Of a DNA stretch of 64,000 bases, positions 11,113 to 58,883 are shown one piece after another. Within the stretch, counting starts at the first letter, position 1, and every line of letters starts with the position of its first letter. Position numbers and translations under genes: made by a program. The notes below the pieces were generated by a model. The model was not told the DNA's origin, did no database searches, and saw only the letters and a program-made list of their open reading frames with translations. The DNA is taken from IMG/VR virus record IMGVR_UViG_3300042359_000853, positions 124,001 to 188,000 of that record; one strand, given 5' to 3'.

Positions 11113-11879
11113 CCGAATAAATCATCACTTTTACCGTAGAAATGTTCCCTCAAAATTGGTAGATAATCATGACATTTGTATATCTTAGCTTCGTCGCCCT
11201 CTGGTCCTAAATGAACGAGATATCCCGATGGTATGATAATACCTTTACCCTCTAGGATAAGACGGTAGAGTGAAATCTGAATCGAATATTCATTGAGGTG
11301 AGTTTTACACCAATCTTGGAAAGGAGGTAGGAGTTTTTCCCAACATTTTTCAGATTCATCTACACCAGTGAACTTTTTATTGGATTTCCAATCAATAATA
11401 AATGGTATATCACCTTTTAGAAAAATAGAATCAATCGTTCCAGCAAGACCAAGCTCACCAGAGAAAACTTTAAGTTCAAACACGACTGGCTCAAAGTTTT
11501 TTAGATACTTAGCCCAGAAAAGATTGAATTTGTTGATTCTACGAACAGCTTCAATATCTGTAGGTAGTTCTTGATAAATGCCGTTGTAGTAGTTCTCGAC
11601 CCACTTATGAACTGAAGTTCCAAGATCGGTGGATATTTTGGCACCAGTTTTCCATTCTAATAAAATCTCTTCTACTGGAACTCCAGTTTTTTCGCTCCGT
11701 TTTTTTGCCCAAAAATCTTCGTCGAATTTTTTATGAAATCTCGAGATATATTTAGTAACTGAAGTAAGTTCAGTATCTCTATAATAATATCGGTGAGCTG
11801 CCTCGTTAAAGACAAACTCTTTATCCTTGAAAACTTCTAATCTATCCTTGAGATTCTGGGTTGCTATCTTGTTCGTCAT
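11109..11879 (-). CDS. PD-(D/E)XK exonuclease (Cas4/YqaJ-like)
   Basis: TSVT..GTSVH..E..LAGTIDSI..IIDWKSN..YSIQISLY. Confidence 0.85.
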   Translation of the reverse strand: MTNKIATQNLKDRLEVFKDKEFVFNEAAHRYYYRDTELTSVTKYISRFHKKFDEDFWAKKRSEKTGVPVEEILLEWKTGAKISTDLGTSVHKWVENYYNGIYQELPTDIEAVRRINKFNLFWAKYLKNFEPVVFELKVFSGELGLAGTIDSIFLKGDIPFIIDWKSNKKFTGVDESEKCWEKLLPPFQDWCKTHLNEYSIQISLYRLILEGKGIIIPSGYLVHLGPEGDEAKIYKCHDYLPILREHFYGKSDDLFG

Positions 11880-13395
11880 CTGGATTATAGTCTAGAAGAG
11901 ATGATGGTGTCTCAATAAAAGTTTCCTCTCTGTTTCTAATCATATTTATAGAAACTCTGAGTTGAGAAGCTAATTCTTGTCTGAGTAATTCAGAATTTCT
12001 GAGTAATTCAGAACGGTCCCGGTCTACGACTATATCGGATCGGAGTCTTCGTGTATCCAAGTGCCCTGTAATATCGCCCATAGATTCCTCATATACAACC
12101 TGTTCAGATGGGTCTTCTGATACATTTATATCTACCGCTGCATTATTTTCATTACCTAGTTCGGGTTCGGGTCGTTGAATCTCGATCGTTTGTTGATGTA
12201 GAAATCTTCTGTAAGGATTTCTTTCAGTTAATAACTCTCTGAATTTCTCTACTTTTTTCATTTTCAGATCTGCTACATCTGAATTTTCAATATCACCGTT
12301 GAGCTCTTCCCATTTTCCTGAGAAAAGATGATCTTCAATTTTATCAGAATATCTACAATCATCAACATGAATCCATCGATTAAGAATATCAGATGAAACA
12401 ACACGGTTTCTATGAACTCTGATATCACGATAATCTAGATAGATTACATCTGAACTATTGTAGTAGTTCAAGTCCTCTTGACTTTGCTCAAGTGAACTAC
12501 TGGGATTAAAAGATCCACTAGAAGAGGTCATTACTACGATTCTCTCACTATTTTTTGGATGATAGTTGTAGAAAGTTTTACTATCCAGGTCAAAAAACTT
12601 GAACGTATCTAAATAGGGAAATCTACTAATATCGGTAGTATCAAGTTTTACCGAAAGTTCAAGGTATTGACGCTTTCCATCTACCATAAACCATAAAGAA
12701 GAGTTCCAACTCTGTTCAGCGCGGCAGTAGTATCCGTTTTCTGTAGCAAAGTCTTTAAAGAGTCCACGATACACAGAATCGTTGGTTGTGTAGATTCTAT
12801 CCATGATTTTCAGACCACCATCGACTTCCCAAAGAAGAGCTCTTCCTAAGAGTGTTCCGAAAATTTTATCACGAAGAATAAGTAGATCGATAGTTCCACT
12901 ATTTTTCGTGTAGAGATCAAAGAACTCCTGACAAGATTTATGCTTCATACAAGACGAGTTCAAGCTACCGTGTGTTCGCTTATCGTAACTTTCTTCATCA
13001 TACCACCATGTGATTTCCTCACCAGTGGCGATGGAAAACTGGGTATGTAGTTTAGATCCGTGAGATTTGATACTATCGATGAATATTTCCATTTCTTGAT
13101 AGTCAATTTTTCTAAAAATCTTAGAAATAACACCAGATGGTTTTGTTTGATAACGCTTTGATGAAGACCAAATCTCATCTTGAGAAATCTTCTCAAACCT
13201 ATCGTGTGTAAGGTAGGAAAGTTTTGAAGGATCAGAAATCGAAATGCCTAAGTAGTTGACAGGATCTTCTACGATTTCATCAAGAGGTATTCTACCCTCA
13301 AGAAGAATCCTCGCGTAGTAAGATTTAGAAGATATAGCTTCAAGAAGATTGTGAAGCTCGGGTGAGATTTCTGGTTTGAAATAAGTTGGTTCCAT
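11842..13395 (-). CDS. Conserved phage protein, SCM-RALLW-MDRIY family, copy 1
   Basis: SLNSSCMKH..GRALLW..IMDRIY..FPYLDTFKF; paralog of 46286..47707. Confidence 0.7.
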   Translation of the reverse strand: MEPTYFKPEISPELHNLLEAISSKSYYARILLEGRIPLDEIVEDPVNYLGISISDPSKLSYLTHDRFEKISQDEIWSSSKRYQTKPSGVISKIFRKIDYQEMEIFIDSIKSHGSKLHTQFSIATGEEITWWYDEESYDKRTHGSLNSSCMKHKSCQEFFDLYTKNSGTIDLLILRDKIFGTLLGRALLWEVDGGLKIMDRIYTTNDSVYRGLFKDFATENGYYCRAEQSWNSSLWFMVDGKRQYLELSVKLDTTDISRFPYLDTFKFFDLDSKTFYNYHPKNSERIVVMTSSSGSFNPSSSLEQSQEDLNYYNSSDVIYLDYRDIRVHRNRVVSSDILNRWIHVDDCRYSDKIEDHLFSGKWEELNGDIENSDVADLKMKKVEKFRELLTERNPYRRFLHQQTIEIQRPEPELGNENNAAVDINVSEDPSEQVVYEESMGDITGHLDTRRLRSDIVVDRDRSELLRNSELLRQELASQLRVSINMIRNREETFIETPSSLLDYNPDDEQDSNPESQG

Positions 13396-13403
13396 TTTTT
13401 TTA

Positions 13404-14276
13404 TTAAGTGGTTTGAAGAAGAAAGTCGAGTTTTTCGTTACGAATAAAACAAGTTGTCATACGCATAATTTTTTGTGCTTCTTTTTTTATAACGTGAGAA
13501 TCTTCGTTAGAAAATATCTGTAAATATAGTGTAAAAACATCAAACGCGTCTAGGCTAAAATCATTTTCTCTAGTGAAAATAATATCTTTACTCTGTGTAT
13601 ATAAAACTTGTTTTTGCGAAGGTGTTAAATCCTTTAGTATCCTACGACCAAAAATTAAAACTTTCTTAAAGGCATCAAACTTTTTGTGATCTGATTTATT
13701 ATCCTTTTCACAAAGAATACGCCTGATATTTGAAATCATAACTCTTTGACCAACCAAACTGTTGATAGCTGAGATTTGTTCTAAAAAAGTTTCACTTACT
13801 AGATTTGATGAAACTTTATCAGCCGCTCTTGTTACACCAGTCAAATGTTTCTTATAGAGGGAAAAGTTTCTATCTGAAAAAACGATTTGTTTATTGCTGT
13901 CTTGTGATTGTAGTCCGATATTCAGCTGGAGAGCTCTTGATTTATCAGAAGAAGACAGAATGTAAAAACTTTTGTTCCAAAAAGATCCAGCTACTTCAAC
14001 TTGATCTGAAAGTAGGGTTAAGGACTGAACACCACCACGAATTTGTAGTCGATAAAAACTAATAGTAAAATTTTGTTCGATTTCAAGAATCTTTTCTTTC
14101 ATGAAAGAAGTAATATCAAATATCTCGTATTTATCCGATACTTCCCTTGTTGAAATTACCCTGTCACCCCACTTGGTGACTACCGTATTTGAGACTTTAT
14201 GAATGGTGATTTTTTCGATTTGAGAAAAAAGTTTCTCTCTATCCCAGGCCTTAAAATTTGACATTATCCAATTCAT
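13404..14276 (-). CDS. DUF932-like protein
   Basis: ILSSSDKSRALQLNIGL and YKKHLTG resemble the DUF932 core. Confidence 0.4.
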   Translation of the reverse strand: MNWIMSNFKAWDREKLFSQIEKITIHKVSNTVVTKWGDRVISTREVSDKYEIFDITSFMKEKILEIEQNFTISFYRLQIRGGVQSLTLLSDQVEVAGSFWNKSFYILSSSDKSRALQLNIGLQSQDSNKQIVFSDRNFSLYKKHLTGVTRAADKVSSNLVSETFLEQISAINSLVGQRVMISNIRRILCEKDNKSDHKKFDAFKKVLIFGRRILKDLTPSQKQVLYTQSKDIIFTRENDFSLDAFDVFTLYLQIFSNEDSHVIKKEAQKIMRMTTCFIRNEKLDFLLQTT

Positions 14277-14298
14277 AAGTTTATTTTTATCTACTCAG

Positions 14299-14306
14299 CA
14301 AATATA
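14299..14306 (-). promoter_or_regulatory. Bacteroidota primary-sigma -7 element (TATATTTG)
   Basis: Matches TAnnTTTG, upstream of 13404..14276. Confidence 0.6.
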
Positions 14307-14336: not shown

Positions 14337-15203
14337 TTAGGTTAAGTTTGTGTAGTTCATCACCAAAACTTCGGTTGCTCGTGATTGTTTTTGTCCACTT
14401 TTAGCCATCGCTGCTTTTGCGAACTCTTGCTGAGTCCATCGGTAACTATCCTTAGGAAACCACTCTTCGAGCTCATTAAAGGGATAATAAGATAGTGAAA
14501 ATTTTCCCGAGATTGATTTTAGACAATTTGCTAGACGAAGATGGTCTCGAGAAGTAAAATCGTGATTGGAATAGTAGGATCCCTCACCGACTTTCCAATA
14601 GGGTGGATCGCAATAGAAATAAGTATCAGGTGAATCTAAGAGAGTAATGATCTGTTCAAAATCAAGCCGATAAACATCGGTTATTAGAGAAAACTTTTCG
14701 CACCATTTATCATTCTCTAGTTTATTGATAAAAGATTGAAACTTCGAGTGGTATTTACCCTTCAGATCAATATATCCTGAAGTCTTGGGATTTGCTCCTG
14801 AGAAGATATTAGAAAGAATCAGCGCGTGTTTGGCAGCTCTTTCGAGATTTGGGACTTCTTCTATTTTGGATTCATCACCATAGAGCTCTCGTTGAGATTG
14901 TAAAAAAAAGTTTTTAGTATCTAAAGATGAACCTACACCCTTTTTTTGATAGGGAAAACTTTTACATATTTCTAAAACACCTTTAGGATCTTGACGAAGA
15001 CTTAGAAAAAGATTGTAGTTCAAGGGGTTCAAATCGTTATAGACAATCCTTTCAAGGTGTGGGTAGTTATCCAAGTTCATTCCGAAATAAGTCCAGAACA
15101 TACCCGAGAAAGTTTCTACATAAGTTTTGATATTTTTTGGTATTTCGGGTATAATCAACTTTTTAGCTATTTGACTTTTACCACCGATATAGGGAAGGCA
15201 CAT
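14337..15203 (-). CDS. dam: DNA adenine methyltransferase (Dam/D12 class), copy 1
   Basis: PYIGGKS, ETFSG, YNDLN, CDPPY. Confidence 0.9.
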   Translation of the reverse strand: MCLPYIGGKSQIAKKLIIPEIPKNIKTYVETFSGMFWTYFGMNLDNYPHLERIVYNDLNPLNYNLFLSLRQDPKGVLEICKSFPYQKKGVGSSLDTKNFFLQSQRELYGDESKIEEVPNLERAAKHALILSNIFSGANPKTSGYIDLKGKYHSKFQSFINKLENDKWCEKFSLITDVYRLDFEQIITLLDSPDTYFYCDPPYWKVGEGSYYSNHDFTSRDHLRLANCLKSISGKFSLSYYPFNELEEWFPKDSYRWTQQEFAKAAMAKSGQKQSRATEVLVMNYTNLT

Positions 15204-15870: not shown

Positions 15871-17058
15871 TTACATTTTTACCTTACTCTCGGTAGTAGT
15901 TGGTGGTTTGTTGATCCGTTGAATGTTCAGTAGGACATCTTTGAAGGCGCTAAGGAATTTTTTCACCTTTGGGTTTGAGATTTGATCCGTTGGGTCGTCT
16001 AAAATCCATAGTAGATAAGCTGTGAGTTCATCATCACCAAGACGCTTTAGAAACTTTGTGAGGTTTGTTAGTTGCTTATCGGATAGATTACCAACAGCAA
16101 ATTCTGGTTCTTTTAAGGATTGAACAAGTTCAGAGTTCTTATCACGGTTGTATTTATCTAGTATTTCTGAAACCTCATCATACCTATTGAGAACGTCACG
16201 AATACTCACACTCATCATTTCTTCACAATATTGTAGAAAACGTTGAGCTCCATTTCCAACATACGAGTGGGAAACTTCTCGTAGATAATCAATGAACATA
16301 TTCACTGAAGATTCTTTACCGAAGTTCTGAACAATAAAATCACTCAAGAAAGTCCAAGAACGAGGTGTAGCGTATGCTTTTGTATTTTCGGTTGGATTCT
16401 GATACAGCTTATCAGGGTAAGCTTTAAGATAAGAGATAATCAAGGGGTGAACCCACTTTGACGCAAAGTCTGTTTGCCAATCGTTCGCAGAGAGTGAGTG
16501 AGACATATGAATAAGACGGTTGTTCAACGCATTGTCGAACTCTTCTACGTCTGTTCCATCTTCGTCACCAAGGTTACCAGAGGCCATCATTAAAACGTTA
16601 CTATTAAACTTGAAGTCACCAATCTCACGCTCAAGTAAGATCTGAAGAGCTGCGTTTCTTACAAATTGCGGAGCTCTGTTCAACTCTTCGAAGTGAATAA
16701 TGGTGGGTTGAGAGTTAGCTTTCAGAGCCCACTCTGGTGTAGAATATCCGTGACACTTCCTAGAGACACCATCGATATCTACTTCTTTAAGGTAGGGAAA
16801 CTTAAAGTCGGTTTCATCAGACATCGATAGACGTAAATCCATATACTGGAAATTCATCTTGTCTGCGATAGACCTGGCGATAGCTGATTTAGCGATACCA
16901 GGTTTTGAGGTAATATAAAGAACACCACTCTTAGGCCACATACACATAAAATATAAACGCTCTCTACGGGTGAGTTCCCGCATTCTTTGGGAGATCTCTT
17001 CGGGAAGAGCTGTGGTCACTGGAAGTGGATTTGGATTTTTTGGAGACATTTTAGCCAT
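15871..17058 (-). CDS. MoxR-like AAA+ ATPase
   Basis: SKPGIAKS (variant Walker A), IIHFEELNRA (Walker B), ASGN, DNALNNR, ATPRSW. Confidence 0.9.
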   Translation of the reverse strand: MAKMSPKNPNPLPVTTALPEEISQRMRELTRRERLYFMCMWPKSGVLYITSKPGIAKSAIARSIADKMNFQYMDLRLSMSDETDFKFPYLKEVDIDGVSRKCHGYSTPEWALKANSQPTIIHFEELNRAPQFVRNAALQILLEREIGDFKFNSNVLMMASGNLGDEDGTDVEEFDNALNNRLIHMSHSLSANDWQTDFASKWVHPLIISYLKAYPDKLYQNPTENTKAYATPRSWTFLSDFIVQNFGKESSVNMFIDYLREVSHSYVGNGAQRFLQYCEEMMSVSIRDVLNRYDEVSEILDKYNRDKNSELVQSLKEPEFAVGNLSDKQLTNLTKFLKRLGDDELTAYLLWILDDPTDQISNPKVKKFLSAFKDVLLNIQRINKPPTTTESKVKM

Positions 17059-17074
17059 AGTTCGTTTTTTTTTA

Positions 17075-17106: not shown

Positions 17107-17124
17107 TATTTAATGAAAATATTT

Positions 17125-17487: not shown

Positions 17488-17493
17488 GATTTT

Positions 17494-44778: not shown

Positions 44779-44831
44779 ATCTGTATGTATATATATATTT
44801 TTTGAAAAATAGTAATTTTATATATAAACAA

Positions 44832-45518
44832 ATGATTACTACAAAAGATTTAGAAACAACATTCAAGGAAATATTCGAAACTGAAAAGGGGTTAGTTCAA
44901 TCCATAGAAACTGTATTCGAATTATCAAGGGATAAAAGTTTTTACAAACTCGTAATTTCTATACATGGACTTTCTATCGAAGATACACTTATTATTCATA
45001 CTAAATTTATCTTCAAAACAAATTTAGAAAAAAACAAATTAATCGAAAACTCGTTTATCTATCTCTACGATATAAATTGTGAATATCACAAAGTAGATTT
45101 TAGAAATATTATTGATCTTAGAAAAAAGATAGAAGATATTATTGAATCAAATGAGTTCGGAACAGATCTTCAAATACTCTCTGATTTTATCGAGGCACCA
45201 TCGATGTTCTTGAACTATTATCTTAAAAGAGCTAGAATAACAAACTACTCAATTTATGATGTTAAATATGATCCGAAATTTAAGACACTACCTTGTAGTC
45301 AAATAACATTTGATTTCAAGATAAATGTTAATAACGCTTATGATATTTCAGTTTCTATTCAGAAAAAAGAAAAAGAAGAGGTTGATGATATAGTGAGGTA
45401 TAAATTCAGATTTCAATTTTTAGATAAAATCTTTAATAGAGAAACCGACACACTAACAAACATTCACTTTTTTATTGGATCAAATATAGCAAAAACGCTC
45501 GATAAAATGATTAAATAA
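44832..45518 (+). CDS. Conserved hypothetical (probable start ATG 44832)
   Basis: Late motif at 44816-44826 directly upstream. Confidence 0.6.
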   Translation: MITTKDLETTFKEIFETEKGLVQSIETVFELSRDKSFYKLVISIHGLSIEDTLIIHTKFIFKTNLEKNKLIENSFIYLYDINCEYHKVDFRNIIDLRKKIEDIIESNEFGTDLQILSDFIEAPSMFLNYYLKRARITNYSIYDVKYDPKFKTLPCSQITFDFKINVNNAYDISVSIQKKEKEEVDDIVRYKFRFQFLDKIFNRETDTLTNIHFFIGSNIAKTLDKMIK

Positions 45519-45550
45519 TTTATATATACATAAAAATAAAAACTTCTACT

Positions 45551-46282
45551 ATGTTCAAACCAAATACCAATAACTATAGAACAAAATATTCTAAAATATC
45601 TCAATTTCATGATTTTACTGATAACATCTCATCTGAAAAAGATGATTTAGAAAGTGTAAAAAGAAGTTATGATCAAGATCATGATTCAGATTATGAGCTA
45701 CCTAATCTCTTCAAGTATAAATACAACCGTGTAACTCGAAAGATAGATGATAAAACGAAAGCTGAAGTTTTAGATGAGTTAGAAGAGATGCCAAATCCAA
45801 AAAAAGAAAAAGAATATACATTAGAACTTGAAAATTTAACTTCATTTGAGGATTTCGCAGATACACCGTCAAATGAAGTGAATGAAGGACCAACTTCCTA
45901 TATGTTTTTCAATAATCTTAAACTTATTCATAAACTTGTTAACGAAATGCTTACTTACGACCAAGAAGTAGTAAACTCTATTTTAGATCACGGTCACAAC
46001 TGGGCCGAAGATCATATGTCAGTAGCAAAAGAAGCTATTTCTCATGTAAGAAACTATTTTGTTGGTGAAGTTGATGCTATCTCCGAATCTTACGAAGGTA
46101 ACTATATGTTTTTCGGAAATCTAGTTTGTATTTCTGATATGATTGAAGAGATTATGGATAGAGATCCAAATAAAATTGACGTAGAGCTTAAAGAAAAACA
46201 CGACTGGGCTGAAGATCATGTCTCAGCCGCTAAAGAAAATGTTACACAAGTTTATGATTTTCTAAAAAATGAAATTAAATAA
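45551..46282 (+). CDS. Protein with tandem HxWAEDH helical repeat
   Basis: Two copies of YMFFxNL...HxWAEDHxSxAKE. Confidence 0.7.
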   Translation: MFKPNTNNYRTKYSKISQFHDFTDNISSEKDDLESVKRSYDQDHDSDYELPNLFKYKYNRVTRKIDDKTKAEVLDELEEMPNPKKEKEYTLELENLTSFEDFADTPSNEVNEGPTSYMFFNNLKLIHKLVNEMLTYDQEVVNSILDHGHNWAEDHMSVAKEAISHVRNYFVGEVDAISESYEGNYMFFGNLVCISDMIEEIMDRDPNKIDVELKEKHDWAEDHVSAAKENVTQVYDFLKNEIK

Positions 46283-46285: not shown

Positions 46286-47707
46286 ATGATTGATAAATAT
46301 TCCCAGTTTTTAGCACAAAAACTCTTATTAGAATCTGAAATCAAATATTCTGATGGTTTTAGAAAGATATTATCTGATATTGGTGACCCAGTAAGTAAAA
46401 CACTATCTTCTCTGGAAAATCAAGATATTAAAACGAATGTTAATTTTATTGATATTCTCAAAGATGATAAAGAGCAATTATCGTTTATTCAAGATAAAAA
46501 AGCTTCAACTCTTTTAAGTAAACTCAAAAATGAAATAGATGTAACTTGGAATGGACAGGGTGGAATACTCAAGAACAACGCGGATAATGAAGATGTTTTT
46601 TCAGCTCTTGGATATGTTAGACCTGAATCCGGTAATCTTCCAAGACCAGCTTCTACACAAACCAGAGGAAAATTATTGAGAGATACGATTTCACCTAAAA
46701 GTGGTAAAATCTATGTTCTTGTAAAGTTTGGTGATATGGAAACAGTTCTCAATAAAGAGTTCTTAAATTTTGTTGATAGATCCGATGAGATCTGGACCCA
46801 ATCAGTTAGACAACCCATGCGTGTAGGAAGAGCAGTGACTGCTCTATTACAAAATGCACCTGTGAAACACACTTCGGTTGAAATTGCTGATTTTGTAAAT
46901 AGATATAAAACAAAAGTTGATGAACTAAATGACGTATTTAGATTTATAGAAGTTGTAAGTGGTGATGATATAGCTAAGTGGTATCATGTAGAAAACTATG
47001 AAGAAAAATCGGGTGGTTCAGAACTTCACCGATCATGTATGGCAAGAAAATCAGCAGGTGTCTTTGAAATCTATACCAAGAATCCAGAAGTTTGTCAGTT
47101 AATTATTCAAAAAAGTGAGAGTGATCCCGACAAAATATCCGCTAGAGCTCTTCTGTGGACTTTGAATAGTGGAAAAAAGTTTATGGATAGAGTTTATTTT
47201 AATGATCCTCAGTCTATTGAGTTATTTAGAAGTTATTGTAAAGAAAATAATATATGGGCTAAATATAATAATAATAGCGGAGCTTTTTCATCTGCTATTA
47301 ATCCCGAAAATGGATCTAGAGAAGAGATCGAAATAGAAGTGGTTCTTGAATCGAGGAAGTACCGTCAGTTTCCCTATATGGATACACTGAAGTTTTTTCA
47401 TCCGAAAAAAGCAATTCTAGACAACTCACATGAGGATGATCCGAACTGGTATAAATTAGAAGACACCGCTGGTGATTATATAAGTCAAGAAGATCAGGGG
47501 TGTGATAGGTGCTACGGTGAAGATTATGTTGATTGTTGGGAATGTGATGGAACGGCTTATTCTAGTTGTGATAATTGTGACGGAGACGGTAAAGTTGAAG
47601 ATGAAGATGGAACAAAAGTTGAATGTGATGTATGCAATGGTAGTGGCAGAATCAATTGTGATACTTGTGATGGGGATGGAAGACTTACTTGTCCTGAATG
47701 TGGTTAA
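46286..47707 (+). CDS. SCM-RALLW-MDRVY family protein, copy 2, with C-terminal DnaJ-type zinc finger
   Basis: RSCMARK..ARALLW..FMDRVY..FPYMDTLKF; five CxxCxG repeats plus a terminal CPEC. Confidence 0.75.
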   Translation: MIDKYSQFLAQKLLLESEIKYSDGFRKILSDIGDPVSKTLSSLENQDIKTNVNFIDILKDDKEQLSFIQDKKASTLLSKLKNEIDVTWNGQGGILKNNADNEDVFSALGYVRPESGNLPRPASTQTRGKLLRDTISPKSGKIYVLVKFGDMETVLNKEFLNFVDRSDEIWTQSVRQPMRVGRAVTALLQNAPVKHTSVEIADFVNRYKTKVDELNDVFRFIEVVSGDDIAKWYHVENYEEKSGGSELHRSCMARKSAGVFEIYTKNPEVCQLIIQKSESDPDKISARALLWTLNSGKKFMDRVYFNDPQSIELFRSYCKENNIWAKYNNNSGAFSSAINPENGSREEIEIEVVLESRKYRQFPYMDTLKFFHPKKAILDNSHEDDPNWYKLEDTAGDYISQEDQGCDRCYGEDYVDCWECDGTAYSSCDNCDGDGKVEDEDGTKVECDVCNGSGRINCDTCDGDGRLTCPECG

Positions 47708-47709: not shown

Positions 47710-48651
47710 TTAAATCTTGATTCCTGTCACTGGATCGTAGTTTAAAATAAGAATCTCACGACCTTTTTCTTGTGGTTTTTTTGTTGATGCGTTATTTCCA
47801 CCTGAGGCAGAGGATCGATTAACTTCTTTTTCATACCACACATATTTATCTTTCGGAAGAAGCTCTTCAAGTAATGGAAAGTAATAATAAGATAGAGACC
47901 ACCTTGAAGATGTAGTTTTAAGAAGTTCTAATAACCTTCTATGTGAAGCGGGACCGAATACACCTTCAGAATCTGCACCATACCAAAATAATCTTTTAGC
48001 ATCATCTTCACCCTTTTCATTTGGTCTAAAATAAGGTGGATCTAGATATAGATAAGTTGTTGGGCTATCCCATTTTCTAATCAGAACCTCGAAATCTAGA
48101 TTATTAAATTCAGTGATTGAATTTAACTTCTGCTCATATTTGCCCTCTTTAAGTTTTTTTAGAAGTGTAAGAAGTTTTAGTCGGTCTTTATCTTTTTTGT
48201 AACCATTAAACCCAGCTCCTCTTGGATAAACCGAATTGTGAGAAGATGTGATTAAAAACGCGTAGATTGCTGCTCTCTTTAGGTCAGGAATCTCGAAATC
48301 TGTAATATCCAAGAAATCATTCTTGGTATATTTGTGGTAGATAGATTTGTAAAAATCCCATTTTTTTAAGGGGTCAGTTTCTGTCGTTCTTAGAGGACCA
48401 GATAAGAACTTTTCTAGAACATCTACGAATGCATCTTTTTGAGAAGCACATTTGAAGAGATTGACTTGGTGTCTGTTTTTATCATTGAAGATGACTTTGT
48501 CAAAGACCAACTCTGGATCATCCATGTAAGTGGCAAAGCTACCACTGAATGGTTCAATATAACAATCTATACCGGTTTTGGGAATTTTTTTATTGATAAA
48601 TTCCATAAAAACATTCGAACTCTTGCCGCCAAAAAAACTGATAATTGACAT
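47710..48651 (-). CDS. dam: DNA adenine methyltransferase (Dam/D12 class), copy 2
   Basis: SFFGGKS, EPFSGS, FNDKN, LDPPY. Confidence 0.9.
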   Translation of the reverse strand: MSIISFFGGKSSNVFMEFINKKIPKTGIDCYIEPFSGSFATYMDDPELVFDKVIFNDKNRHQVNLFKCASQKDAFVDVLEKFLSGPLRTTETDPLKKWDFYKSIYHKYTKNDFLDITDFEIPDLKRAAIYAFLITSSHNSVYPRGAGFNGYKKDKDRLKLLTLLKKLKEGKYEQKLNSITEFNNLDFEVLIRKWDSPTTYLYLDPPYFRPNEKGEDDAKRLFWYGADSEGVFGPASHRRLLELLKTTSSRWSLSYYYFPLLEELLPKDKYVWYEKEVNRSSASGGNNASTKKPQEKGREILILNYDPVTGIKI

Positions 48652-48753: not shown

Positions 48754-49103
48754 TGGTGGAGGTGCTGGGATTCGAACCCAGGTTTCTACATTTACCTAAA
48801 TAATCAATCATTCACAAGCTTAGAACTCTTTTCTAAGAGAACCAACTATCGGATTTTATCGAAGAACCTTCCGAAAAAACTTTTGAGGCTATTTATAGAG
48901 TTACCTCATTCTCGGAAACGTCTAGGCTACGGCCAATCTGTTTGCCTTTAGGATGTTGTTGCGTAGGGCGAATACTAAGTCTTCAACGCTTCCTACTTCA
49001 TTCGTGTTGCCACTTAAAGTTTTCATACAACTTATGAATCGGTGAGTATGATCCGATGCTTGCTTGATTACCCGAATAAATGAGTCAAAAGCCATTCACC
49101 CCC
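48754..49103 (-). ncRNA. ssrA: tmRNA
   Basis: 5' GGGGGTGAATGGCTTTTGAC, 3' GGGTTCGAATCCCAGCACCTCCACCA; 7-bp acceptor stem with G3.U wobble and encoded CCA; internal tag ORF 48922-49011 ending LAVA*. Confidence 0.93.
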
Positions 49104-49440: not shown

Positions 49441-51099
49441 TTAGTCAAATTTGAATTTTATAGTGCCGGTCTCAAATACAATAGTAGGTTTGAAACCCGT
49501 ATCGTCAAAAAGTTTTTTGTAGGTTTCAAGCTCTCTTTTCACCGTTAGGATAGGAGTTTCATCTACTGGAAGCAATAGATAGAAGTTTTCATCATCGGTA
49601 TAAACCTTTTTTGAGTTGAATAACCTTTGTCTTTTCATCTTCATAATCAGTGAGCCATATTTAGCTGAGATAGATGGATCTAGACCTACTTTTCTAGCTA
49701 TACGAAGATTATTCCAATTTACACCGAGAGTTGCTCTTGCTAATCTTTCGAGAAAAGAAATGTTTTGCATTTCAGTATGTGTATGCTCTGAGAAATATCC
49801 AACAGAGATGTTTGTACATTCTGGTATAAGATCCATAAATGATGCTGAATCGGTGAACACACCGGTGTTATCTAACCTCATCTGCATACCATTCGCGTTA
49901 AGTTCATCACATAGACTTTGAGCAAAGACGTTTGAGCAACAAGTTTGAGAAAGTTGAGAAGTGATTACTGAGAAATAGTTTCTTCTATCAAAAGAAATAC
50001 ATTTTTTCATACCTCTAAGATGTTGTATAGTATCAAAGTTTTCAGCTACTTTACTAGATCCAATAGCCCCGCGCTCTTCACCAATAAAGAAGTAATACAC
50101 ACCAGGTATTCTGTTAGCAATCATATAAAGAAGTATAGTAACACCAGCCTTATCATCAGCTCCAAGTATAGATGTTCCATCAGTTACAAAAATTTCATCT
50201 CCGTTCTCGGTATAGGAAAGAACTCTAACTGCACTTTTAGTTCTTGATGCTGTGTCAGTGTGACAAGTAAACATGGTATCAGAATTTCCGATGACTAAGT
50301 AGTAGTTTCCCCACTGGTCCTTTTGTAGACCAGGAACAGGTAGATATTCCATGACTTCTTCTTCGTGTCCATGTGGATAAGTCTCAGTTGTAAGAGATAA
50401 GAAAGTAGATCGAACGTCTTTTGGATCATATTGAAATGGACGAACCGTTACTGGATCCCCTTTAGCTACTGAATAATATTTACTACCATAACTAGATCCG
50501 TAACCATAAGATGTTCCGGTTCCCCAACTTTTGTTGCCACTTTTAGATGACCACGAACCCGAACCACCATACAATTCAACATCTGAACCATCGTAATAAT
50601 CATAATCATCATCACGAGCACCTTTAGAAGTAGAAGTTGATCCAGAAGTTTTGCTCAAACTAGGAATAAGAGGTTTTTTCTGAACCCAACGATTATAATA
50701 GATCAAAAAGTTCTGAACAAGGGAGTCTAATTGTTTTTTGGTGTATTTAGAAGAAAAATCCGGATTTTTACCCATGAAATATTTTAGAAGAGCACTCACA
50801 CCAATCACACCGGTCTTTTCTCCAAGTACGACATCAAAATAATCAGGTGAAGTAGAGCAGTCTAAAGTTTTCAGATTTATCTTGTTTTCATACTTATCAT
50901 TTTGGTGTAGATCGAAGAAAAACTCACAAACAACAATTGTTTCATCCAACGACTTTGATGTTTTATCATTAACTTTGGCTTTATCATAGGATAAATCTGA
51001 TAGATCGCCGAGCATCACCCAAAATCCATCTGTGAAATTAATTAGTGGCCCGGATTCTCCACCTTCTAACATTTCTATTTTTTCTTTTTCTTTTTGCAT
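49441..51099 (-). CDS. M28/M20-like zinc hydrolase, copy 1, with extra N-terminal domain
   Basis: YPHGHE, FTCHTDT, LGADDKAG, GEERG, SFDRR, FTDS, PECTNISVGY..EH. Confidence 0.85.
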   Translation of the reverse strand: MQKEKEKIEMLEGGESGPLINFTDGFWVMLGDLSDLSYDKAKVNDKTSKSLDETIVVCEFFFDLHQNDKYENKINLKTLDCSTSPDYFDVVLGEKTGVIGVSALLKYFMGKNPDFSSKYTKKQLDSLVQNFLIYYNRWVQKKPLIPSLSKTSGSTSTSKGARDDDYDYYDGSDVELYGGSGSWSSKSGNKSWGTGTSYGYGSSYGSKYYSVAKGDPVTVRPFQYDPKDVRSTFLSLTTETYPHGHEEEVMEYLPVPGLQKDQWGNYYLVIGNSDTMFTCHTDTASRTKSAVRVLSYTENGDEIFVTDGTSILGADDKAGVTILLYMIANRIPGVYYFFIGEERGAIGSSKVAENFDTIQHLRGMKKCISFDRRNYFSVITSQLSQTCCSNVFAQSLCDELNANGMQMRLDNTGVFTDSASFMDLIPECTNISVGYFSEHTHTEMQNISFLERLARATLGVNWNNLRIARKVGLDPSISAKYGSLIMKMKRQRLFNSKKVYTDDENFYLLLPVDETPILTVKRELETYKKLFDDTGFKPTIVFETGTIKFKFD

Positions 51100-51960: not shown

Positions 51961-52005
51961 TAAACAATCGGTTTTTAATATATATATAAAATTTAAAGGA
52001 ATAAA

Positions 52006-54014: not shown

Positions 54015-55180
54015 TCCTAGTTGAAAAGCACATAATTAGATCAGGTAAATATTTCAATCAACTAATGGAAGTTACTAGATTGAGTAAAAATCTTTATAAT
54101 TCTGGTTTGTATGCTGTGAGGCAGCACTATTTTGAATACAAGAAGTTCTTAAATTATGTAAATCTTAATAATATGTTTGTTGAACAGAAACAACAAGATT
54201 ATTACAAACTACCAGCAAAGGTTAGCCAACAAACACTGAAAATGGTGGAACAAAATTTCAAATCATTTTTTGGATTACTAAAATCTGAAAAAACTAAAAA
54301 GGTAAAAATACCTAAATATCTGGATAAAAATTCCAGTTTTTTAACAATTTGGACAAATCAAGCAGTTTCTCTCAAAAAGAAGGGTTACTTAAAGCTATCA
54401 GGAACTGATGTCTATATCAAAACAGATATTGATCATATCAATCAAGTTAGAGTTGTTCCTAGAAATAATGAGTTAGTAGTAGAGATATTATATGAAGTCC
54501 GGGAAAATGATTTAAAGAAAGATAACGGAAAATATTCATCTATAGATCTTGGCATCAATAATCTCATGACTTTATCGGGAAACACAACAAAACCTATTAT
54601 AGTCAATGGGAAACCACTAAAATCTATTAATCAGTATTACAACAAGAAAAAATCCGAAATTCAGGGTAAATTAGAAACAATCAACAAAACAAAAAAGAGC
54701 AAAAAATTAAATAAACTAACAAACAAAAGAAACAACAAAATAAATGATTATCTACACAAATCAAGTAAAATAATTATCAATCATTTAGTTTCCAAAGATA
54801 TATGTACTTTAATAGTTGGATACAATCAATACTGGAAACAAGAGATAAATATTGGAAAAAAGAATAATCAGAATTTTGTTTCAATTCCCTATCTAAAATT
54901 ATTAAATATGTTAGAATACAAATGTAAAAAAGAAGGCATTAACTTTGTCAAAAACGAGGAGAGTTATACATCCAAGTGCTCGTTTATAGATGGTGAGGAA
55001 ATTAAAAAACATACAAAATATTTAGGTAAAAGAATAAAAAGAGGATTATTCGAGAGCGCGTCTGGTAAATTGATAAATGCGGATTTGAATGGATCTCTAA
55101 ATATTCTCAAAAAAGTAGTTGGGGAATTTCAGTACCCAATAGAGGTGTGTAGCACGCCAAAAGTTATTAATTTAGCTTAG
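54011..55180 (+). CDS. tnpB: TnpB RNA-guided endonuclease
   Basis: SKNLYN, SIDLGINN (RuvC-I), DYLHKSS, EESYTSKC, NADLNGSLNI (RuvC-III). Confidence 0.95.
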   Translation: MILVEKHIIRSGKYFNQLMEVTRLSKNLYNSGLYAVRQHYFEYKKFLNYVNLNNMFVEQKQQDYYKLPAKVSQQTLKMVEQNFKSFFGLLKSEKTKKVKIPKYLDKNSSFLTIWTNQAVSLKKKGYLKLSGTDVYIKTDIDHINQVRVVPRNNELVVEILYEVRENDLKKDNGKYSSIDLGINNLMTLSGNTTKPIIVNGKPLKSINQYYNKKKSEIQGKLETINKTKKSKKLNKLTNKRNNKINDYLHKSSKIIINHLVSKDICTLIVGYNQYWKQEINIGKKNNQNFVSIPYLKLLNMLEYKCKKEGINFVKNEESYTSKCSFIDGEEIKKHTKYLGKRIKRGLFESASGKLINADLNGSLNILKKVVGEFQYPIEVCSTPKVINLA

Positions 55181-56938: not shown

Positions 56939-56945
56939 AAAATAT

Positions 56946-57692: not shown

Positions 57693-57778
57693 TTTATGTT
57701 ATTTTTTCTTTTTATAGTTTTTTTTAGACTATAAGTTTTTTTTTCATAGAATATAGCTGGAAATTAAAAAATATTCCG

Positions 57779-57786
57779 TAACTTTG
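57779..57786 (+). promoter_or_regulatory. Bacteroidota -7 element TAACTTTG, near-leaderless
   Basis: Ends 5 nt before the ATG at 57792. Confidence 0.55.
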
Positions 57787-57791
57787 CTATT

Positions 57792-58883
57792 ATGAAAATT
57801 ATAGACACTTTTTTAGAGCTGACCTCTCAAACTTATCCACACGGTCACGAACGGGAACTTGAACGATTTTTACCGAAAGGTATTTGTATCGATGAGTTTG
57901 GAAACTATTTTATGTATGTTGGAGATAAAACAACTACGACAATGTTTACTTGTCACTTAGATACCGCATCGTATGAAAAATCAAGAGTAACACATGTTAT
58001 TCGTGATGATAAAATTTTTACCGATGGTCGAACCATTCTCGGAGCTGACGATAAATCTGGTATGACTATCCTTCTTTGGATGATTCATAAAGGTGTTCAA
58101 GGTCTTTATTATTTTTTTCTAGGTGAAGAAAGAGGTTGTGTTGGTTCGGGAAAACTTAAAAGAGTATTTACCGAAATGTATCCACTGATTACGAAAATAA
58201 TTTCTTTCGATAGACGAGGCACACACTCGGTGATTACACACCAATCTTACGGAAGAACAGCCTCAGACGAGTTCGCTAGAGATCTATCAAGGCGACTAAA
58301 CGAAACCGGTTATGGTTTTAGGTATGAGCCGGATCCCACGGGTATTTACACCGATTCCAATCAGTTTGCCTCGATAGTTCCAGAATGCACAAATATTTCA
58401 GTAGGTTACCGAGACGAGCACTCAACTTATGAATCTCAAATTATTTCACACCTTGAAAATCTTTGCTACGCAGTTACTCAAATTGATTGGGAATCAGTAG
58501 TAGTAGCTAGAGACCCTAAGGTAAAAGATAGTGGTTGGGGATACGACTATGGATATTGGGGGAGGAGCCAAAGCTATACTGAACGAGATGAATGGTTCGA
58601 TGATTACTTTAGTCAATCGGATAGTTCTACCTATTCTCACGGGAAAACTTACTATGACGGAATAACGATAGACGAATTCGGTGATCCCGTTGATAGTAAT
58701 GACGAAATTTCACTTGAAGATATTAAGATGGTCCTCGATAAAATGGAAGTCGAATACCAAAAAATCCACTGGAATGGTGAAGAATGTTATGTTGAAATTG
58801 ATGGTTCTATGCAGTATTTTGCCGATAGAGAAAACTTAGTTGATTTTATCGATTATTATCAACACTTCTCTAACCAAGAATAA
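57792..58883 (+). CDS. M28/M20-like zinc hydrolase, copy 2
   Basis: YPHGHE, FTCHLDT, LGADDKSG, GEERG, SFDRR, YTDS, PECTNISVGY..EH. Confidence 0.85.
   Translation: MKIIDTFLELTSQTYPHGHERELERFLPKGICIDEFGNYFMYVGDKTTTTMFTCHLDTASYEKSRVTHVIRDDKIFTDGRTILGADDKSGMTILLWMIHKGVQGLYYFFLGEERGCVGSGKLKRVFTEMYPLITKIISFDRRGTHSVITHQSYGRTASDEFARDLSRRLNETGYGFRYEPDPTGIYTDSNQFASIVPECTNISVGYRDEHSTYESQIISHLENLCYAVTQIDWESVVVARDPKVKDSGWGYDYGYWGRSQSYTERDEWFDDYFSQSDSSTYSHGKTYYDGITIDEFGDPVDSNDEISLEDIKMVLDKMEVEYQKIHWNGEECYVEIDGSMQYFADRENLVDFIDYYQHFSNQE

What the first reader, a model, noticed from the sequence alone, without database searches (positions are those of the whole stretch)
11842..58883. Candidate undescribed two-component system: SCM-RALLW-MDR(I/V)Y protein plus M28-like hydrolase, each in early and late copies
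Both families occur twice. SCM copy 1 (11842) and hydrolase copy 2 (57792) are under host-type early promoters. SCM copy 2 (46286, capsid-targeting-like motif, DnaJ zinc finger) and hydrolase copy 1 (49441) are in TATATA late units about 1.7 kb apart. The SCM protein has a conserved Cys, a possible nucleophile, and the hydrolases keep the Zn ligands (H-x-D, DD, EE, D, H). Parallel duplication suggests a writer/eraser or processing pair acting both from the virion and after early expression. The target is unknown.
Basis: inference. Interest (0 to 1): 0.8.

Follow-up and report, generated by a model that had tools for sequence, protein, structure and literature searches.

The report
Conserved phage peptidase plus unknown-enzyme pair
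A lake-water jumbo phage carries two copies each of a zinc exopeptidase and of an uncharacterised, virus-only enzyme-like protein, and these two genes sit side by side in many unrelated phages, so they look like an undescribed two-enzyme module whose chemistry and target are still unknown.

Summary
SCM1/SCM2 are paralogs (32% identity, E 3e-22) and HYD1/HYD2 are paralogs (48%, E 1e-69). All peptidase metal ligands and the SCM cysteine are conserved.

New evidence links the two families. They are adjacent in several phage lineages, often with overlapping stop and start codons, and form two conserved pair types:
- Type A: a HYD2-like peptidase followed by an SCM1-like gene.
- Type B: an SCM2-like gene (with a DnaJ-type zinc finger) convergent with a HYD1-like gene, with a tmRNA gene between them.

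The N-terminal extension of HYD1-type peptidases is homologous to the SCM N-terminal module (hhalign E 1e-5). A probable remote SCM homolog lies directly upstream of the same peptidase in KP34-like Klebsiella, Vibrio and Pectobacterium podophages.

The SCM core is a large viral family (5,868 clusters) with no Pfam or PDB relative. Its predicted fold is weakly GNAT/PcfJ-like, and its conservation is at active-site level.

The promoter split is real at motif level: a host Bacteroidota −7 box versus a phage TATATA box. TATATA also drives a topoisomerase gene, so "late" and "virion" are unproven.

The writer/eraser chemistry is inference. Verdict: a real, undescribed, functionally coupled module of unknown mechanism.

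The parts
11842..13395 (-). SCM1, 517 aa. Short SCM N-terminal module (about residues 1-72), SCM core (residues 73-279, nt 12559-13179), acidic C-terminal tail. No zinc finger.
   Evidence: ORF. Paralog of SCM2. All invariant residues kept. Second gene of a unit headed by a host-type box.
14299..14306 (-). TATATTTG, a Bacteroidota-type -7 box 22 nt upstream of the 13404-14276 gene that precedes SCM1.
   Evidence: Same motif class before HYD2-like genes in 11 related loci.
46286..47707 (+). SCM2, 473 aa. SCM N-terminal module (nt 46286-46765), SCM core (46763-47485), DnaJ/BSD2-type zinc finger with three CxxCxGxG repeats (47495-47707).
   Evidence: AF2 model of the core has pLDDT 89.6. Third gene of a TATATA-headed unit conserved in L003, L004, L008 and L010. 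Low-depth metatranscriptome contigs cover it.
44802..46282 (+). Two genes of unknown function (238 and 243 aa) that precede SCM2 in the same unit. TATATA boxes lie at 44817-44826 and 45519-45528.
   Evidence: The same two-gene lead-in occurs in L003, L004, L008 and L010. No Pfam or PHROG match.
49441..51099 (-). HYD1, 552 aa. N-terminal extension homologous to the SCM N-terminal module (about residues 1-135, nt 50695-51099), a Gly/Ser/Tyr-rich linker, a lid-less dizinc peptidase domain (residues 232-474, nt 49678-50406) and a C-terminal tail.
   Evidence: (phrog_4191, E 1e-63). N-terminal homology: hhalign E 1.4e-5 against 0.54 for reversed controls. RNA-library contigs cover it.
51981..51990 (-). 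TTTATATATA box heading the unit 51960->49139 that contains HYD1. A second TATATA lies about 12 nt before the ATG of the 51108-51605 gene.
   Evidence: TATATA lies directly before HYD1-type genes in L003, L004, L008 and L010.
57792..58883 (+). HYD2, 363 aa. The peptidase domain starts at residue 1 (nt 57792-58526) and is followed by an acidic, Tyr-rich tail.
   Evidence: phrog_4191, E 4e-67; Peptidase T 3gb0, E 7e-7.
57779..57786 (+). TAACTTTG, a Bacteroidota-type -7 box 6 nt before the HYD2 ATG, in a 99-nt intergenic gap.
   Evidence: TAnnTTTG precedes HYD2-like genes in 11 related loci.
48754..49103 (-). Phage tmRNA gene with its own TATATA box (49113-49122), lying between SCM2/methyltransferase and HYD1. 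Associated by position; a role in the module is not shown.
   Evidence: ARAGORN. Rfam RF00023, 65.3 bits. Same position in L003, L004 and L008. Depth 300-800 in freshwater metatranscriptomes.
47710..48651 (-). Dam-like DNA methyltransferase, copy 2. It is a paralog of 14337-15203(-), which lies one gene from SCM1. This is the third duplicated family; membership in the module is doubtful.
   Evidence: phrog_56. 32% identity, E 2e-33. A methyltransferase homolog occurs in 13 of 166 related loci, next to an SCM2-type gene in L005 and L011 and far from any SCM gene in most others.

Best explanation
The four genes are two diverged sets of one conserved phage module made of two enzymes that act on the same, still unknown, target.

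Component 1 is a lid-less dizinc exopeptidase or amidohydrolase of the MH clan. Its ligand spacing is M28-like, its nearest solved relative is Peptidase T, and all ligands and the catalytic Glu are intact.

Component 2, the 'SCM' protein, belongs to a large family seen only in viral sequences. It has an N-terminal helical module, an alpha/beta core with a weakly GNAT/PcfJ-like predicted fold, and an invariant polar constellation: Tyr, Ser-Cys, Tyr, Asn, Arg, Asp-Arg-x-Tyr and Pro-Tyr-x-Asp. That pattern indicates an enzyme rather than a scaffold.

Most likely mechanism (inference): the SCM core carries out a Cys-dependent acyl, aminoacyl or peptidyl transfer or cleavage on an amino group or terminus of a protein or other macromolecule. 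The peptidase removes or trims the terminal residue or acyl group on the same substrate. This could be a sequential processing pair or a write/erase pair. The shared SCM N-terminal module is the docking or targeting element.

Set A is the HYD2 and SCM1 lineage. HYD2 is read from a host sigma-type promoter at the onset of infection.

Set B is SCM2 with its DnaJ-type zinc finger plus HYD1 with its grafted SCM N-module. It is read from the phage's own TATATA promoters, next to a phage tmRNA gene.

Status of each step:
- Shown: paralogy, intact catalytic residues, gene linkage, shared N-module, the two promoter motif classes.
- Inferred: enzymatic chemistry, common target, timing.

My probabilities: that the two proteins are functionally coupled, about 0.8. 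That the chemistry is specifically transferase plus exopeptidase on a terminal amide, about 0.25.
For: Linkage:
- 23 of 79 IMG/VR loci around SCM genes hold the peptidase within 10 kb. The genes are 0-36 nt apart on the same strand in L052, L062, L066, L070, L077 and L080, and are interleaved as 4 SCM plus 2 HYD in L037.
- 30 of 80 HYD2-like loci hold an SCM gene within 10 kb, and 13 within 400 nt.
- In Cellulophaga phage phi40:1, gp038 (M20-type peptidase) and gp037 (SCM) are 30 nt apart.
- There are two conserved pair types with matching subfamilies. The grouping is congruent in both trees: clade B has support 100 and 96, and the labels need 4 changes against 11.8 in shuffles.
- The megaphage records hold 7-15 SCM and 4-6 peptidase places each.

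Shared domain:
- The HYD1-type N-extension matches the SCM N-module with hhalign E 1.4e-5 and 8.4e-6, probability 80-83%. Reversed controls give E 0.54.
- The motif [LIV]-x-[FY]-[ST]-[DE]-x-F-x-x-[ILM]-L sits at the same N-terminal offset in both families in five loci.

Enzyme-like conservation of SCM:
- C92 338/338, R128 342/342, D142, Y145, P204 and D207 100%.
- The family has 5,868 clusters at 50% identity.

Fold:
- The AF2 model has pLDDT 89.6.
- All top PDB matches by Foldseek are GNAT-superfamily proteins (4lua with probability 0.96, FemX, FemA, Eis, NMT).
- ESM Atlas structure hits are GNATs.

Peptidase:
-.

Promoters:
-.

Autographiviridae:
- The ORF directly upstream of the peptidase (KpV71 gp11, Vibrio OWB_00005) carries the same five motifs in the same order. 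The regex hits 334 of 377 SCM proteins, 0 of 3,653 other ORFs, and 1-3 per 100,000 shuffles.
- hhalign gives E 0.013 with a colinear alignment.
- That ORF (KP34p10) and the peptidase are both listed as conserved genes in KP34-like phages. In PhiM1-like phages the peptidase, and the hypothetical protein listed just before it (PhiM1_09), are among the conserved genes, and the peptidase is one of six conserved early-region ORFs (PMC4411677, PMC6115819).
Against: - No biochemical or genetic data exist for either family. Literature searches found only the annotation 'putative peptidase'.
- The fold assignment is weak: TM-score at most 0.37 and best E 1e-3.
- There is no acyl-CoA-binding glycine motif between the fourth strand and the third helix, so the donor, if any, is unknown.
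- The peptidase also occurs without a detectable SCM partner within 8 kb in Thermus phage G20c and Bacillus phage Tsamsa.
- In this window, SCM1 and HYD2 are 44 kb apart.
- Many jumbo-phage loci are related to each other, so synteny counts are not independent.
- The link to the Autographiviridae partner is not significant by HMM. The regex was written after both families had been seen. The AF2 model of that partner failed (pLDDT 38).
- No fusion of the two catalytic domains was found among 211 SCM proteins.
Confidence: 0.6

Rival explanations
1. SCM is not a catalyst. It is an adaptor, regulator or pro-protein substrate of the peptidase: it brings the peptidase to a target or is itself trimmed or activated, and the invariant residues form a binding surface or a metal or redox site.
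For: The genes are tightly linked, with translational-coupling-like overlaps. The N-terminal module is shared. Variable C-terminal protein-interaction modules such as the DnaJ-type zinc finger are present. The acyl-CoA motif is absent, and there is no significant match to any enzyme family.
Against: Eleven polar residues scattered over 130 positions are more than 99% invariant across sequences that are only 25-30% identical. That is typical of an active site and unusual for an adaptor. There is a single invariant Cys and no invariant His or second Cys, which argues against a structural metal site. SCM genes commonly form tandem arrays of 2-4 without extra peptidases.
Confidence: 0.15
2. There is no functional coupling. 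Two independent accessory enzymes are neighbours only because related phages inherited the same gene order.
For: Most loci with the pair fall into a few clades: a jumbo-phage clade and Pervagoviridae-like compact phages. The peptidase exists alone in Thermus and Bacillus phages. SCM1 and HYD2 are unlinked in the window. 56 of 79 SCM loci have no peptidase within 10 kb.
Against: Adjacency recurs in lineages whose proteins are only 25-30% identical and whose surrounding genes differ. It occurs in both gene orders (L077). The subfamilies are paired (A with A, B with B). A peptidase subfamily has acquired an SCM-derived N-terminal domain. Within this window, the only duplicated families are these two plus one methyltransferase.
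Confidence: 0.12
3. The module is part of a DNA-modification pathway. SCM would be a Mom-like, GNAT-fold enzyme that adds an acyl or aminoacyl group to a base, and the M20/M28-like amidohydrolase would trim it, working alongside the duplicated Dam-like methyltransferases.
For: A Dam-like methyltransferase paralog lies one gene from SCM1, and another abuts SCM2. A methyltransferase also lies next to SCM2-type genes in L005 and L011. In T7-like phages the pair sits directly before primase, helicase and polymerase. That Mu Mom has a GNAT-type fold is from my own knowledge and was not tested here.
Against: The methyltransferase is present in only 13 of 166 related loci and is absent from the compact-phage pairs. 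There is no similarity to Mom or to known hypermodification enzymes in Pfam or PHROGs. To my knowledge KP34-like phages are not known to carry hypermodified DNA.
Confidence: 0.08
4. The TATATA-driven copies (SCM2, HYD1) are packaged through their N-terminal motif and injected, so they act before any gene expression. The host-promoter copies act after early expression.
For: Both type-B proteins, and only they among the peptidases, carry the same N-terminal module. This is what a shared packaging or targeting signal would look like. The portal gene is also under a TATATA box.
Against: The same N-module is present in most SCM proteins, including SCM1 and the type-A partners (median N-extension 123 aa), so it is not specific to 'late' copies. 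TATATA also drives topoisomerase II, the tmRNA and a homing endonuclease. In Cellulophaga phi40:1, where virion proteomics is annotated, gp037 and gp038 are not marked structural. No virion data exist for this phage.
Confidence: 0.12

Closest known systems
MEROPS clan MH dizinc exopeptidases (M28 aminopeptidases; M20 Peptidase T, DapE, ArgE-type amidohydrolases); phage family phrog_4191 'peptidase'
   Same: The full ligand set is present: His, bridging Asp, Glu-Glu, Asp, His. The spacing is M28-like (31, 26, 27 and 70 residues). There is significant similarity to Peptidase T (3gb0, E 7e-7) and a strong phrog_4191 match. The protein is already annotated 'putative peptidase' in KP34-like and PhiM1-like phages.
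   Different: It scores below the Pfam gathering cut-offs for M28, M20 and M42. It lacks the M20 lid/dimerisation domain. It carries phage-specific tails, and in type B an N-terminal module borrowed from its partner protein. The substrate is unknown.
GNAT-superfamily acyl/aminoacyl transferases (N-acetyltransferases; FemX/FemA aminoacyl-tRNA-dependent transferases)
   Same: The predicted topology of the SCM core follows the GNAT order through strand 5 (strand 1, helices 1 and 2, strands 2-4, helix 3, strand 5). All top Foldseek PDB hits are GNAT-fold proteins. The invariant residues sit on strands 3 and 4 and on the loop between helices 1 and 2, where GNATs bind substrate.
   Different: The TM-scores are very low. 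There is no Pfam or PDB sequence match. There is no Q/R-x-x-G-x-G/A pyrophosphate loop. An invariant Ser-Cys dyad is not a GNAT feature. The extra strands after strand 5 differ.
PcfJ-like domain (PF14284), function unknown, found on conjugative plasmids and phages
   Same: One BFVD structural hit to a PcfJ-like phage protein (E 4e-3, probability 0.89). 74 of the 100 nearest named ESM-Atlas clusters are PcfJ. pCF10 PcfJ has a comparable 'L-x-H-C-V ... Y ... strand-strand' segment.
   Different: No Pfam hit in 46 members. hhalign is not significant. PcfJ lacks the R, D-R-x-Y and P-Y-x-D motifs, and its own function is unknown.
Acylation/deacylation enzyme pairs of metabolism (for example ArgA with ArgE, DapD with DapE), given as a functional analogy
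   Same: An acyltransferase-fold enzyme is paired with an M20/M28-type metallo-amidohydrolase. This is the type of logic proposed here (own knowledge).
   Different: There is no sequence relationship on the SCM side, no pathway context, and the proposed substrates here are unknown macromolecules. This is an analogy only.

Membership tests
MH-clan dizinc peptidase (M28/M20) | Metal ligands His, Asp (bridging), Glu, Asp/Glu, His plus a catalytic Glu, in the canonical order | tested here: met
   H55, D86, E112/E113, D140 and H210 are invariant in 15 divergent sequences including HYD1 and HYD2. They align with Peptidase T around the H-x-D, GADDK, GEE and V-G-Y-x-x-x-H motifs.
MH-clan dizinc peptidase (M28/M20) | Score above the Pfam gathering threshold for PF04389 (M28) or PF01546 (M20) | tested here: not met
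   HYD2 scores 19.5 bits against a cut-off of 21.3, and HYD1 12.7 bits. The phi40:1 peptidase scores 21.8 bits against 24.6 for M20. The proteins are divergent members; PHROG family phrog_4191 matches at E 1e-63 to 1e-67.
M20 subfamily (Peptidase T type) | Lid/dimerisation domain inserted in the catalytic domain | tested here: not met
   About 60 residues in HYD2 correspond to about 167 residues in 3gb0 between the two aligned blocks. The architecture is therefore single-domain and M28-like.
GNAT superfamily | GNAT alpha/beta fold | tested here: inconclusive
   The model is confident (pLDDT 89.6). The Foldseek top 50 hits are almost all GNAT-fold proteins, but the best E is 1e-3 and TM is 0.2-0.37. 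ESM-Atlas structure hits have TM 0.40-0.53.
GNAT superfamily | Acyl-CoA pyrophosphate-binding loop (Q/R-x-x-G-x-G/A) after strand 4 | tested here: not met
   The consensus after the F-M-D-R-V-Y strand is x-x-x-D-S-D. There is no glycine motif.
GNAT superfamily | Sequence-profile match to an acetyltransferase family | tested here: not met
   There is no such Pfam hit in 46 members at E up to 0.05 and no PDB sequence hit with the family profile.
PcfJ-like (PF14284) | Pfam PF14284 match | tested here: not met
   No hit. hhalign against pCF10 PcfJ gives probability 0.3%. Only structural and language-model leads exist.
DUF7277 (PF23942) | Pfam gathering score of 27 bits | tested here: not met
   The best score shown is 18.2 bits for the SCM2 core. 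3 of 46 members hit, with a best E of 4.5e-4. This is possibly a distant relative covering strand 3 to strand 5.
DnaJ/BSD2-type zinc finger | Repeated CxxCxGxG motifs | tested here: met
   SCM2 residues about 406-473 hold three CxxCxGxG motifs plus three further CxxC motifs. Orthologs pass BSD2_CRD (35.4 bits against 27) and come near DnaJ_CXXCXGXG (30.6 against 32.7). SCM2 itself is sub-threshold.
Known anti-phage defence or candidate systems (PADLOC-DB) | Match of any component to a PADLOC model | tested here: not met
   There is only a weak hit of the SCM2 zinc-finger region to PDC-M01B (E 1.7e-4), and nothing for the SCM core or the peptidases.
Capsid-targeted (packaged) phage proteins | Presence in virions, and an N-terminal targeting sequence removed by the prohead protease | not testable with these tools
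   There is no virion proteome for this phage. The shared N-terminal module exists, but it is also in type-A SCM proteins. phi40:1 gp037 and gp038 are not annotated structural.

The most novel reading that the evidence does not exclude
The SCM domain is a new class of cysteine-dependent enzyme found only in viruses. Together with its dizinc exopeptidase partner it would form a phage-specific system that rewrites the termini of host or phage macromolecules, for example by creating or removing N-terminal residues or acyl groups on proteins or on aminoacylated RNAs. The constant tmRNA neighbour of the type-B pair would fit that idea. The system would be used for host takeover or counter-defence and would be conserved from T7-like Klebsiella, Vibrio and Pectobacterium podophages to 0.2-0.7 Mb Bacteroidota phages.
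Probability: 0.2. Interest if true: 0.85.

Novelty: categorically new. Interest (0 to 1): 0.68.

Why it matters
- The SCM domain is one of the larger unannotated phage protein families: 5,868 clusters at 50% identity. No hit was found in one motif-pattern scan of 185,579 species-representative cellular genomes.
- Tying it to a recognisable zinc exopeptidase gives the first handle on its function.
- The pair, or a probable remote version of it, is a core early-region feature of KP34-like Klebsiella phages and other Autographiviridae, and of Cellulophaga model phages. These are cultured and genetically tractable, so the hypothesis can be tested directly.
- If the two enzymes modify and trim a common target, this would be a new host-takeover or counter-defence chemistry.
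- Even if the function proves mundane, about 390 GenBank phage genomes would gain an annotation for a conserved early gene.
- The finding also documents two promoter classes and a conserved, highly represented phage tmRNA in an uncultured freshwater jumbo phage.

Tried and rejected
- Pfam, PHROGs, PADLOC and PDB sequence searches of the SCM proteins and of 46 family members gave nothing significant for the core.
- Domain fusions as a functional clue: no SCM-peptidase fusion, and no informative extra domains in long family members beyond zinc fingers.
- A conserved third partner gene: the neighbours differ between lineages (exonuclease VIII, GroEL, PhoH, a 1,800-aa protein). The Dam-like methyltransferase is an occasional neighbour only.
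- Proving homology of the Autographiviridae upstream protein (phrog_6980) to SCM:
  - HMM searches in both directions were not significant.
  - hhalign with 3 sequences failed.
  - hhalign with 11 sequences gave E 0.013.
  - The database search returned only near-identical sequences.
  - The IMG/VR scan added no diversity.
  - The AF2 model was unusable (pLDDT 38), so it was not sent to Foldseek.
  - The link therefore rests on motif colinearity and gene context.
- PcfJ relationship: not supported by hhalign.
- Scan of representative bacterial and archaeal genomes for SCM: the first alignment had no usable pattern; the second found no relative.
- Literature: the search for 'PcfJ' was swamped by C. 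elegans pCFJ plasmids. Nothing was found on PcfJ-like function, DUF7277 or the pair.
- TAnnTTTG as a window-wide enriched motif: rejected (85 observed, 79 expected).
- Equating the TATATA box with 'late': rejected, because it also precedes topoisomerase II and the tmRNA.

Full report
**Context**

The window has 33.7% G+C. It is part of a 227.6-kb IMG/VR viral contig (L002 and L087) that recurs in lake-water metagenomes. The nearest GenBank relatives of the SCM and peptidase genes are unannotated 'uncultured phage' records of 634-735 kb, at 30-39% (SCM2) and 36-45% (HYD2) protein identity.

The window encodes a portal protein, topoisomerase II, an exonuclease, two Dam-like methyltransferases, a transposase, a homing endonuclease and a tmRNA. 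The presence of the Bacteroidota −7 promoter box points to a Bacteroidota host. One near-identical protein is also labelled as coming from a Flavobacteriaceae metagenome-assembled genome.

**Observation check**

All four ORFs exist as described.
- SCM1 and SCM2 share 32% identity over 222 residues (E 3e-22).
- HYD1 and HYD2 share 48% over 250 residues (E 1e-69).
- tblastn finds no further copies in the window.
- An all-against-all comparison of the 69 ORFs finds only three paralogous pairs: SCM, the peptidase and a Dam-like methyltransferase. The duplication is therefore selective.

**The peptidase**

- Both copies match phrog_4191 'peptidase' (E 1e-63 and 4e-67).
- They fall just under Pfam's M28 cut-off.
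- Their best solved relative is Peptidase T, 3gb0 (E 7e-7).
- In an alignment of 15 relatives down to 22% identity, H55, D57, D86, E112, E113, D140, R141, D188, H210 and E214 are invariant. This is the complete dizinc ligand set plus the catalytic Glu, with M28-like spacing.
- The M20 lid domain is absent.
- It is therefore an intact, single-domain MH-clan exopeptidase or amidohydrolase.

**The SCM protein**

- The core (residues 160-400 of SCM2) has no Pfam, PHROG or PDB sequence relative. The only hint is a sub-threshold DUF7277 hit.
- A profile search of 1.84 billion cluster representatives finds 5,868 clusters at E up to 1e-3.
- ESM-Atlas neighbours are 86-100% viral.
- A motif-pattern scan of one genome per species (185,579 bacterial and archaeal species) found no relative.
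- In 343 unique sequences the Cys is 338/338. R128, D142, Y145, P204 and D207 are 100% conserved. S91, Y74, Y104, N107, W132 and R143 are above 99%. This is active-site-level conservation.
- An AlphaFold model built from a 46-sequence alignment is confident (pLDDT 89.6). Its strand and helix order follows the GNAT topology through strand 5.
- Foldseek against the PDB returns almost only GNAT-fold proteins, but weakly: best E 1e-3, TM at most 0.37. Against viral models it returns 16 uncharacterised phage proteins, then a PcfJ-like protein and GNATs.
- The acyl-CoA glycine loop is absent.
- SCM2 and its orthologs end in a DnaJ/BSD2-type zinc finger. SCM1 does not.

**Linkage**

- Around 79 IMG/VR SCM loci (±10 kb), 23 contain the peptidase. 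In L052, L062, L066, L070 and L080 the peptidase stop overlaps or abuts the SCM start. In L077 the order is reversed, with 36 nt between the genes. L037 interleaves four SCM and two peptidase genes.
- Around 80 HYD2-like loci, 30 contain an SCM gene and 13 have it within 400 nt.
- In Cellulophaga phage phi40:1 the annotated M20-type peptidase gp038 is followed 30 nt later by the SCM homolog gp037.
- The huge-phage GenBank records carry 7-15 SCM places and 4-6 peptidase places each.

**Two pair types**

Sorting adjacent pairs by subfamily gives two conserved arrangements.
- Type A: a peptidase that starts directly with the catalytic domain (closest to HYD2), followed on the same strand by an SCM without a zinc finger (closest to SCM1).
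- Type B: an SCM with a 160-residue N-terminal module and a zinc finger (SCM2 type), convergent with a peptidase that has an N-terminal extension (HYD1 type), 0.7-1.7 kb apart. This is seen in the window, L003, L004, L008 and L010.

In both protein trees type B is a well-supported clade (100 and 96). The pair-type labels need 4 changes, against 11.8 in shuffles. This fits co-inheritance of the pairs, although shared genome phylogeny contributes.

**A shared domain**

The N-termini of SCM2 and HYD1 show the same motif at the same offset, and the motif is conserved in the orthologs of both families. A profile of 98 SCM N-terminal modules aligns to a profile of 11 HYD1-type N-extensions with E 1.4e-5 and 8.4e-6 (probability 80-83%). 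Reversed controls give E 0.54.

The type-B peptidase has therefore acquired its partner's N-terminal module. This is the strongest single sign that the two proteins dock to each other or to a common target. By eye, the same module is present in short form in SCM1. It occurs in most family members (median N-extension 123 residues), so it is not a marker of 'late' copies.

**Promoters**

- TTWATATATA occurs 20 times against 1.5 expected, and nearly always 10-30 nt before a start codon.
- It heads the SCM2 unit, the HYD1 unit and the tmRNA. It also heads the portal, topoisomerase II and other genes.
- TAnnTTTG, the Bacteroidota −7 box (own knowledge), is not enriched overall. However, six copies sit 13-30 nt before start codons in intergenic gaps. 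These include HYD2 and the gene heading the unit that contains SCM1.
- Both classes are conserved in relatives. 11 HYD2-like genes are preceded by TAnnTTTG. All 12 adjacent SCM1-like genes in the jumbo clade are preceded by TATATA. HYD1-type genes and SCM2-type units in L003, L004, L008 and L010 are preceded by TATATA.
- The host-type versus phage-type split is therefore real, but it does not map onto 'both early' versus 'both late', and timing is unmeasured.
- Freshwater metatranscriptome assemblies contain low-depth contigs over SCM2, the methyltransferase and HYD1, and very deep ones over the tmRNA.

**tmRNA**

A tmRNA gene (Rfam 65 bits) lies between the SCM2/methyltransferase genes and HYD1. 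A tmRNA is found in the same position in L003, L004 and L008. Whether it belongs to the module is unknown, because these loci are related to each other.

**Extension to Autographiviridae**

The peptidase is in 391 GenBank phages, mostly Klebsiella (Drulisvirus), Pectobacterium and Vibrio podophages.
- In KpV71, Vibrio phage OWB and PP90, the ORF directly upstream of the peptidase is a 557-711-residue protein with no annotated function (KpV71 gp11 and OWB_00005 match phrog_6980).
- It carries G-S-C-M, Y, R-A, R-x-Y, P-Y-x-D and a trailing Y-x-x-[EQ]-D-[ST]-x-G motif in the same order as SCM. It also has a Cys-rich C-terminus.
- HMM searches are not significant.
- hhalign gives E 0.013 with a fully colinear alignment.
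- A five-motif pattern matches 334 of 377 SCM proteins, 0 of 3,653 other ORFs, KpV71 gp11 and OWB_00005 but not PP90, and 1-3 per 100,000 shuffles. The pattern was written after I had seen both families.
- I rate remote homology as probable, not shown.
- Published comparative genomics lists this ORF (KP34p10) and the peptidase as conserved genes in KP34-like phages. In PhiM1-like phages the peptidase is one of six conserved early-region ORFs, and the hypothetical protein listed just before it is also conserved (PMC4411677, PMC6115819).
- Thermus and Bacillus phages have the peptidase without a detectable partner nearby.

**Mechanism**

Shown:
- Two intact enzyme-like families.
- Genetic coupling between them.
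- A shared N-terminal module.
- Two promoter motif classes.

Inferred:
- The SCM core performs Cys-dependent acyl, aminoacyl or peptidyl transfer or cleavage, and the peptidase trims the terminal residue or acyl group of the same substrate.
- The GNAT-like fold without a CoA loop resembles aminoacyl-tRNA-dependent transferases more than acetyltransferases, but the evidence is thin.

I give about 0.8 to functional coupling and about 0.25 to this specific chemistry. The rivals are: SCM as an adaptor or substrate; synteny only; a DNA-modification pathway with the duplicated methyltransferases; and virion delivery of the type-B copies.

**Novelty**

The peptidase is a divergent member of a known clan and is already annotated as such. 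The following are not described in any library or paper I could search:
- the SCM family;
- its coupling to the peptidase;
- the two pair types;
- the grafted N-module.

**Limits**

- Many loci are phylogenetically related.
- Contigs are fragments, so absence within 10 kb is not absence from the genome.
- The fold assignment is weak.
- No experiment bears on activity, timing or location.

Noticed in passing
window 48754-49103 (-): A phage-encoded tmRNA (Rfam RF00023, 65.3 bits) with a predicted 29-residue tag ending in LAVA and its own TATATA box at 49113-49122. It is very abundant in lake and river metatranscriptome assemblies (depth 300-800; one 326-nt contig with no differences). The 57-aa 'ORF' at 48922-49095 is the tag reading frame, not a protein gene. 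The same tmRNA position occurs in L003, L004 and L008.
   Followed up: partly
window 14337-15203 (-) and 47710-48651 (-): Two Dam-like (DPPY motif) DNA methyltransferase paralogs, 32% identical (E 2e-33). One lies one gene from SCM1 and the other abuts SCM2. This is the only other duplicated family in the window. Homologs occur in 13 of 166 related loci, next to an SCM2-type gene in L005 and L011 and far from any SCM gene in most others.
   Followed up: partly
window, 20 sites such as 1556, 4289, 7168, 34833, 37644, 44817, 45519, 51981, 56384, 61205: A phage-specific promoter-like box, TTWATATATA (20 found, 1.5 expected), lies 10-30 nt before start codons of structural, replication and RNA genes alike. 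It is conserved before orthologous genes in related jumbo-phage contigs.
   Followed up: partly
window 14299, 17075, 22247, 24891 (-); 27384, 57779 (+): Six TAnnTTTG boxes (Bacteroidota -7 type), several with a TTG 16-21 nt upstream, head units in the 11-29 kb region and HYD2. This suggests a host-RNA-polymerase-dependent gene set and a Bacteroidota host.
   Followed up: partly
IMG/VR loci L037/L120, L039, L040, L042, L044, L048, L051, L054, L060, L069: SCM-family genes often form tandem arrays of three or four diverged paralogs. Some proteins carry two SCM cores (P0071, P0072). The 634-735 kb GenBank phages hold 7-15 copies.
   Followed up: no
window 7183-11112 (+): A 1,309-aa protein with several long Thr/Pro-rich linkers separating repeated globular modules, under a TATATA box. 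It is possibly a fibre or adhesin. Not analysed.
   Followed up: no
window 54011-55180 (+) and 62430-63947 (-): A transposase-like gene (phrog_506, E 7e-50) and a large homing/HNH endonuclease (phrog_3339, E 4e-118) lie inside the phage genome, close to HYD2 and the portal gene.
   Followed up: no
window 27405-29216 (+): An ABC-transporter-like ATPase (phrog_2392, E 2e-112) under a host-type TAnnTTTG box.
   Followed up: no
L195 (pCF10) 15874-17984 (-): On plasmid pCF10 the PcfJ-domain gene overlaps a gene annotated as Cas9 inhibitor AcrIIA9 family and lies near ArdC-like and other leading-region genes. This is a possible hint that PcfJ-like domains act in establishment or counter-defence.
   Followed up: no
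L052, L062, L066, L077, L080, L086 peptidase C-termini: The type-A peptidases of compact phages end in a CxxC...CxxC zinc-ribbon-like segment. In type B, by contrast, the zinc finger is on the SCM partner.
   Followed up: no
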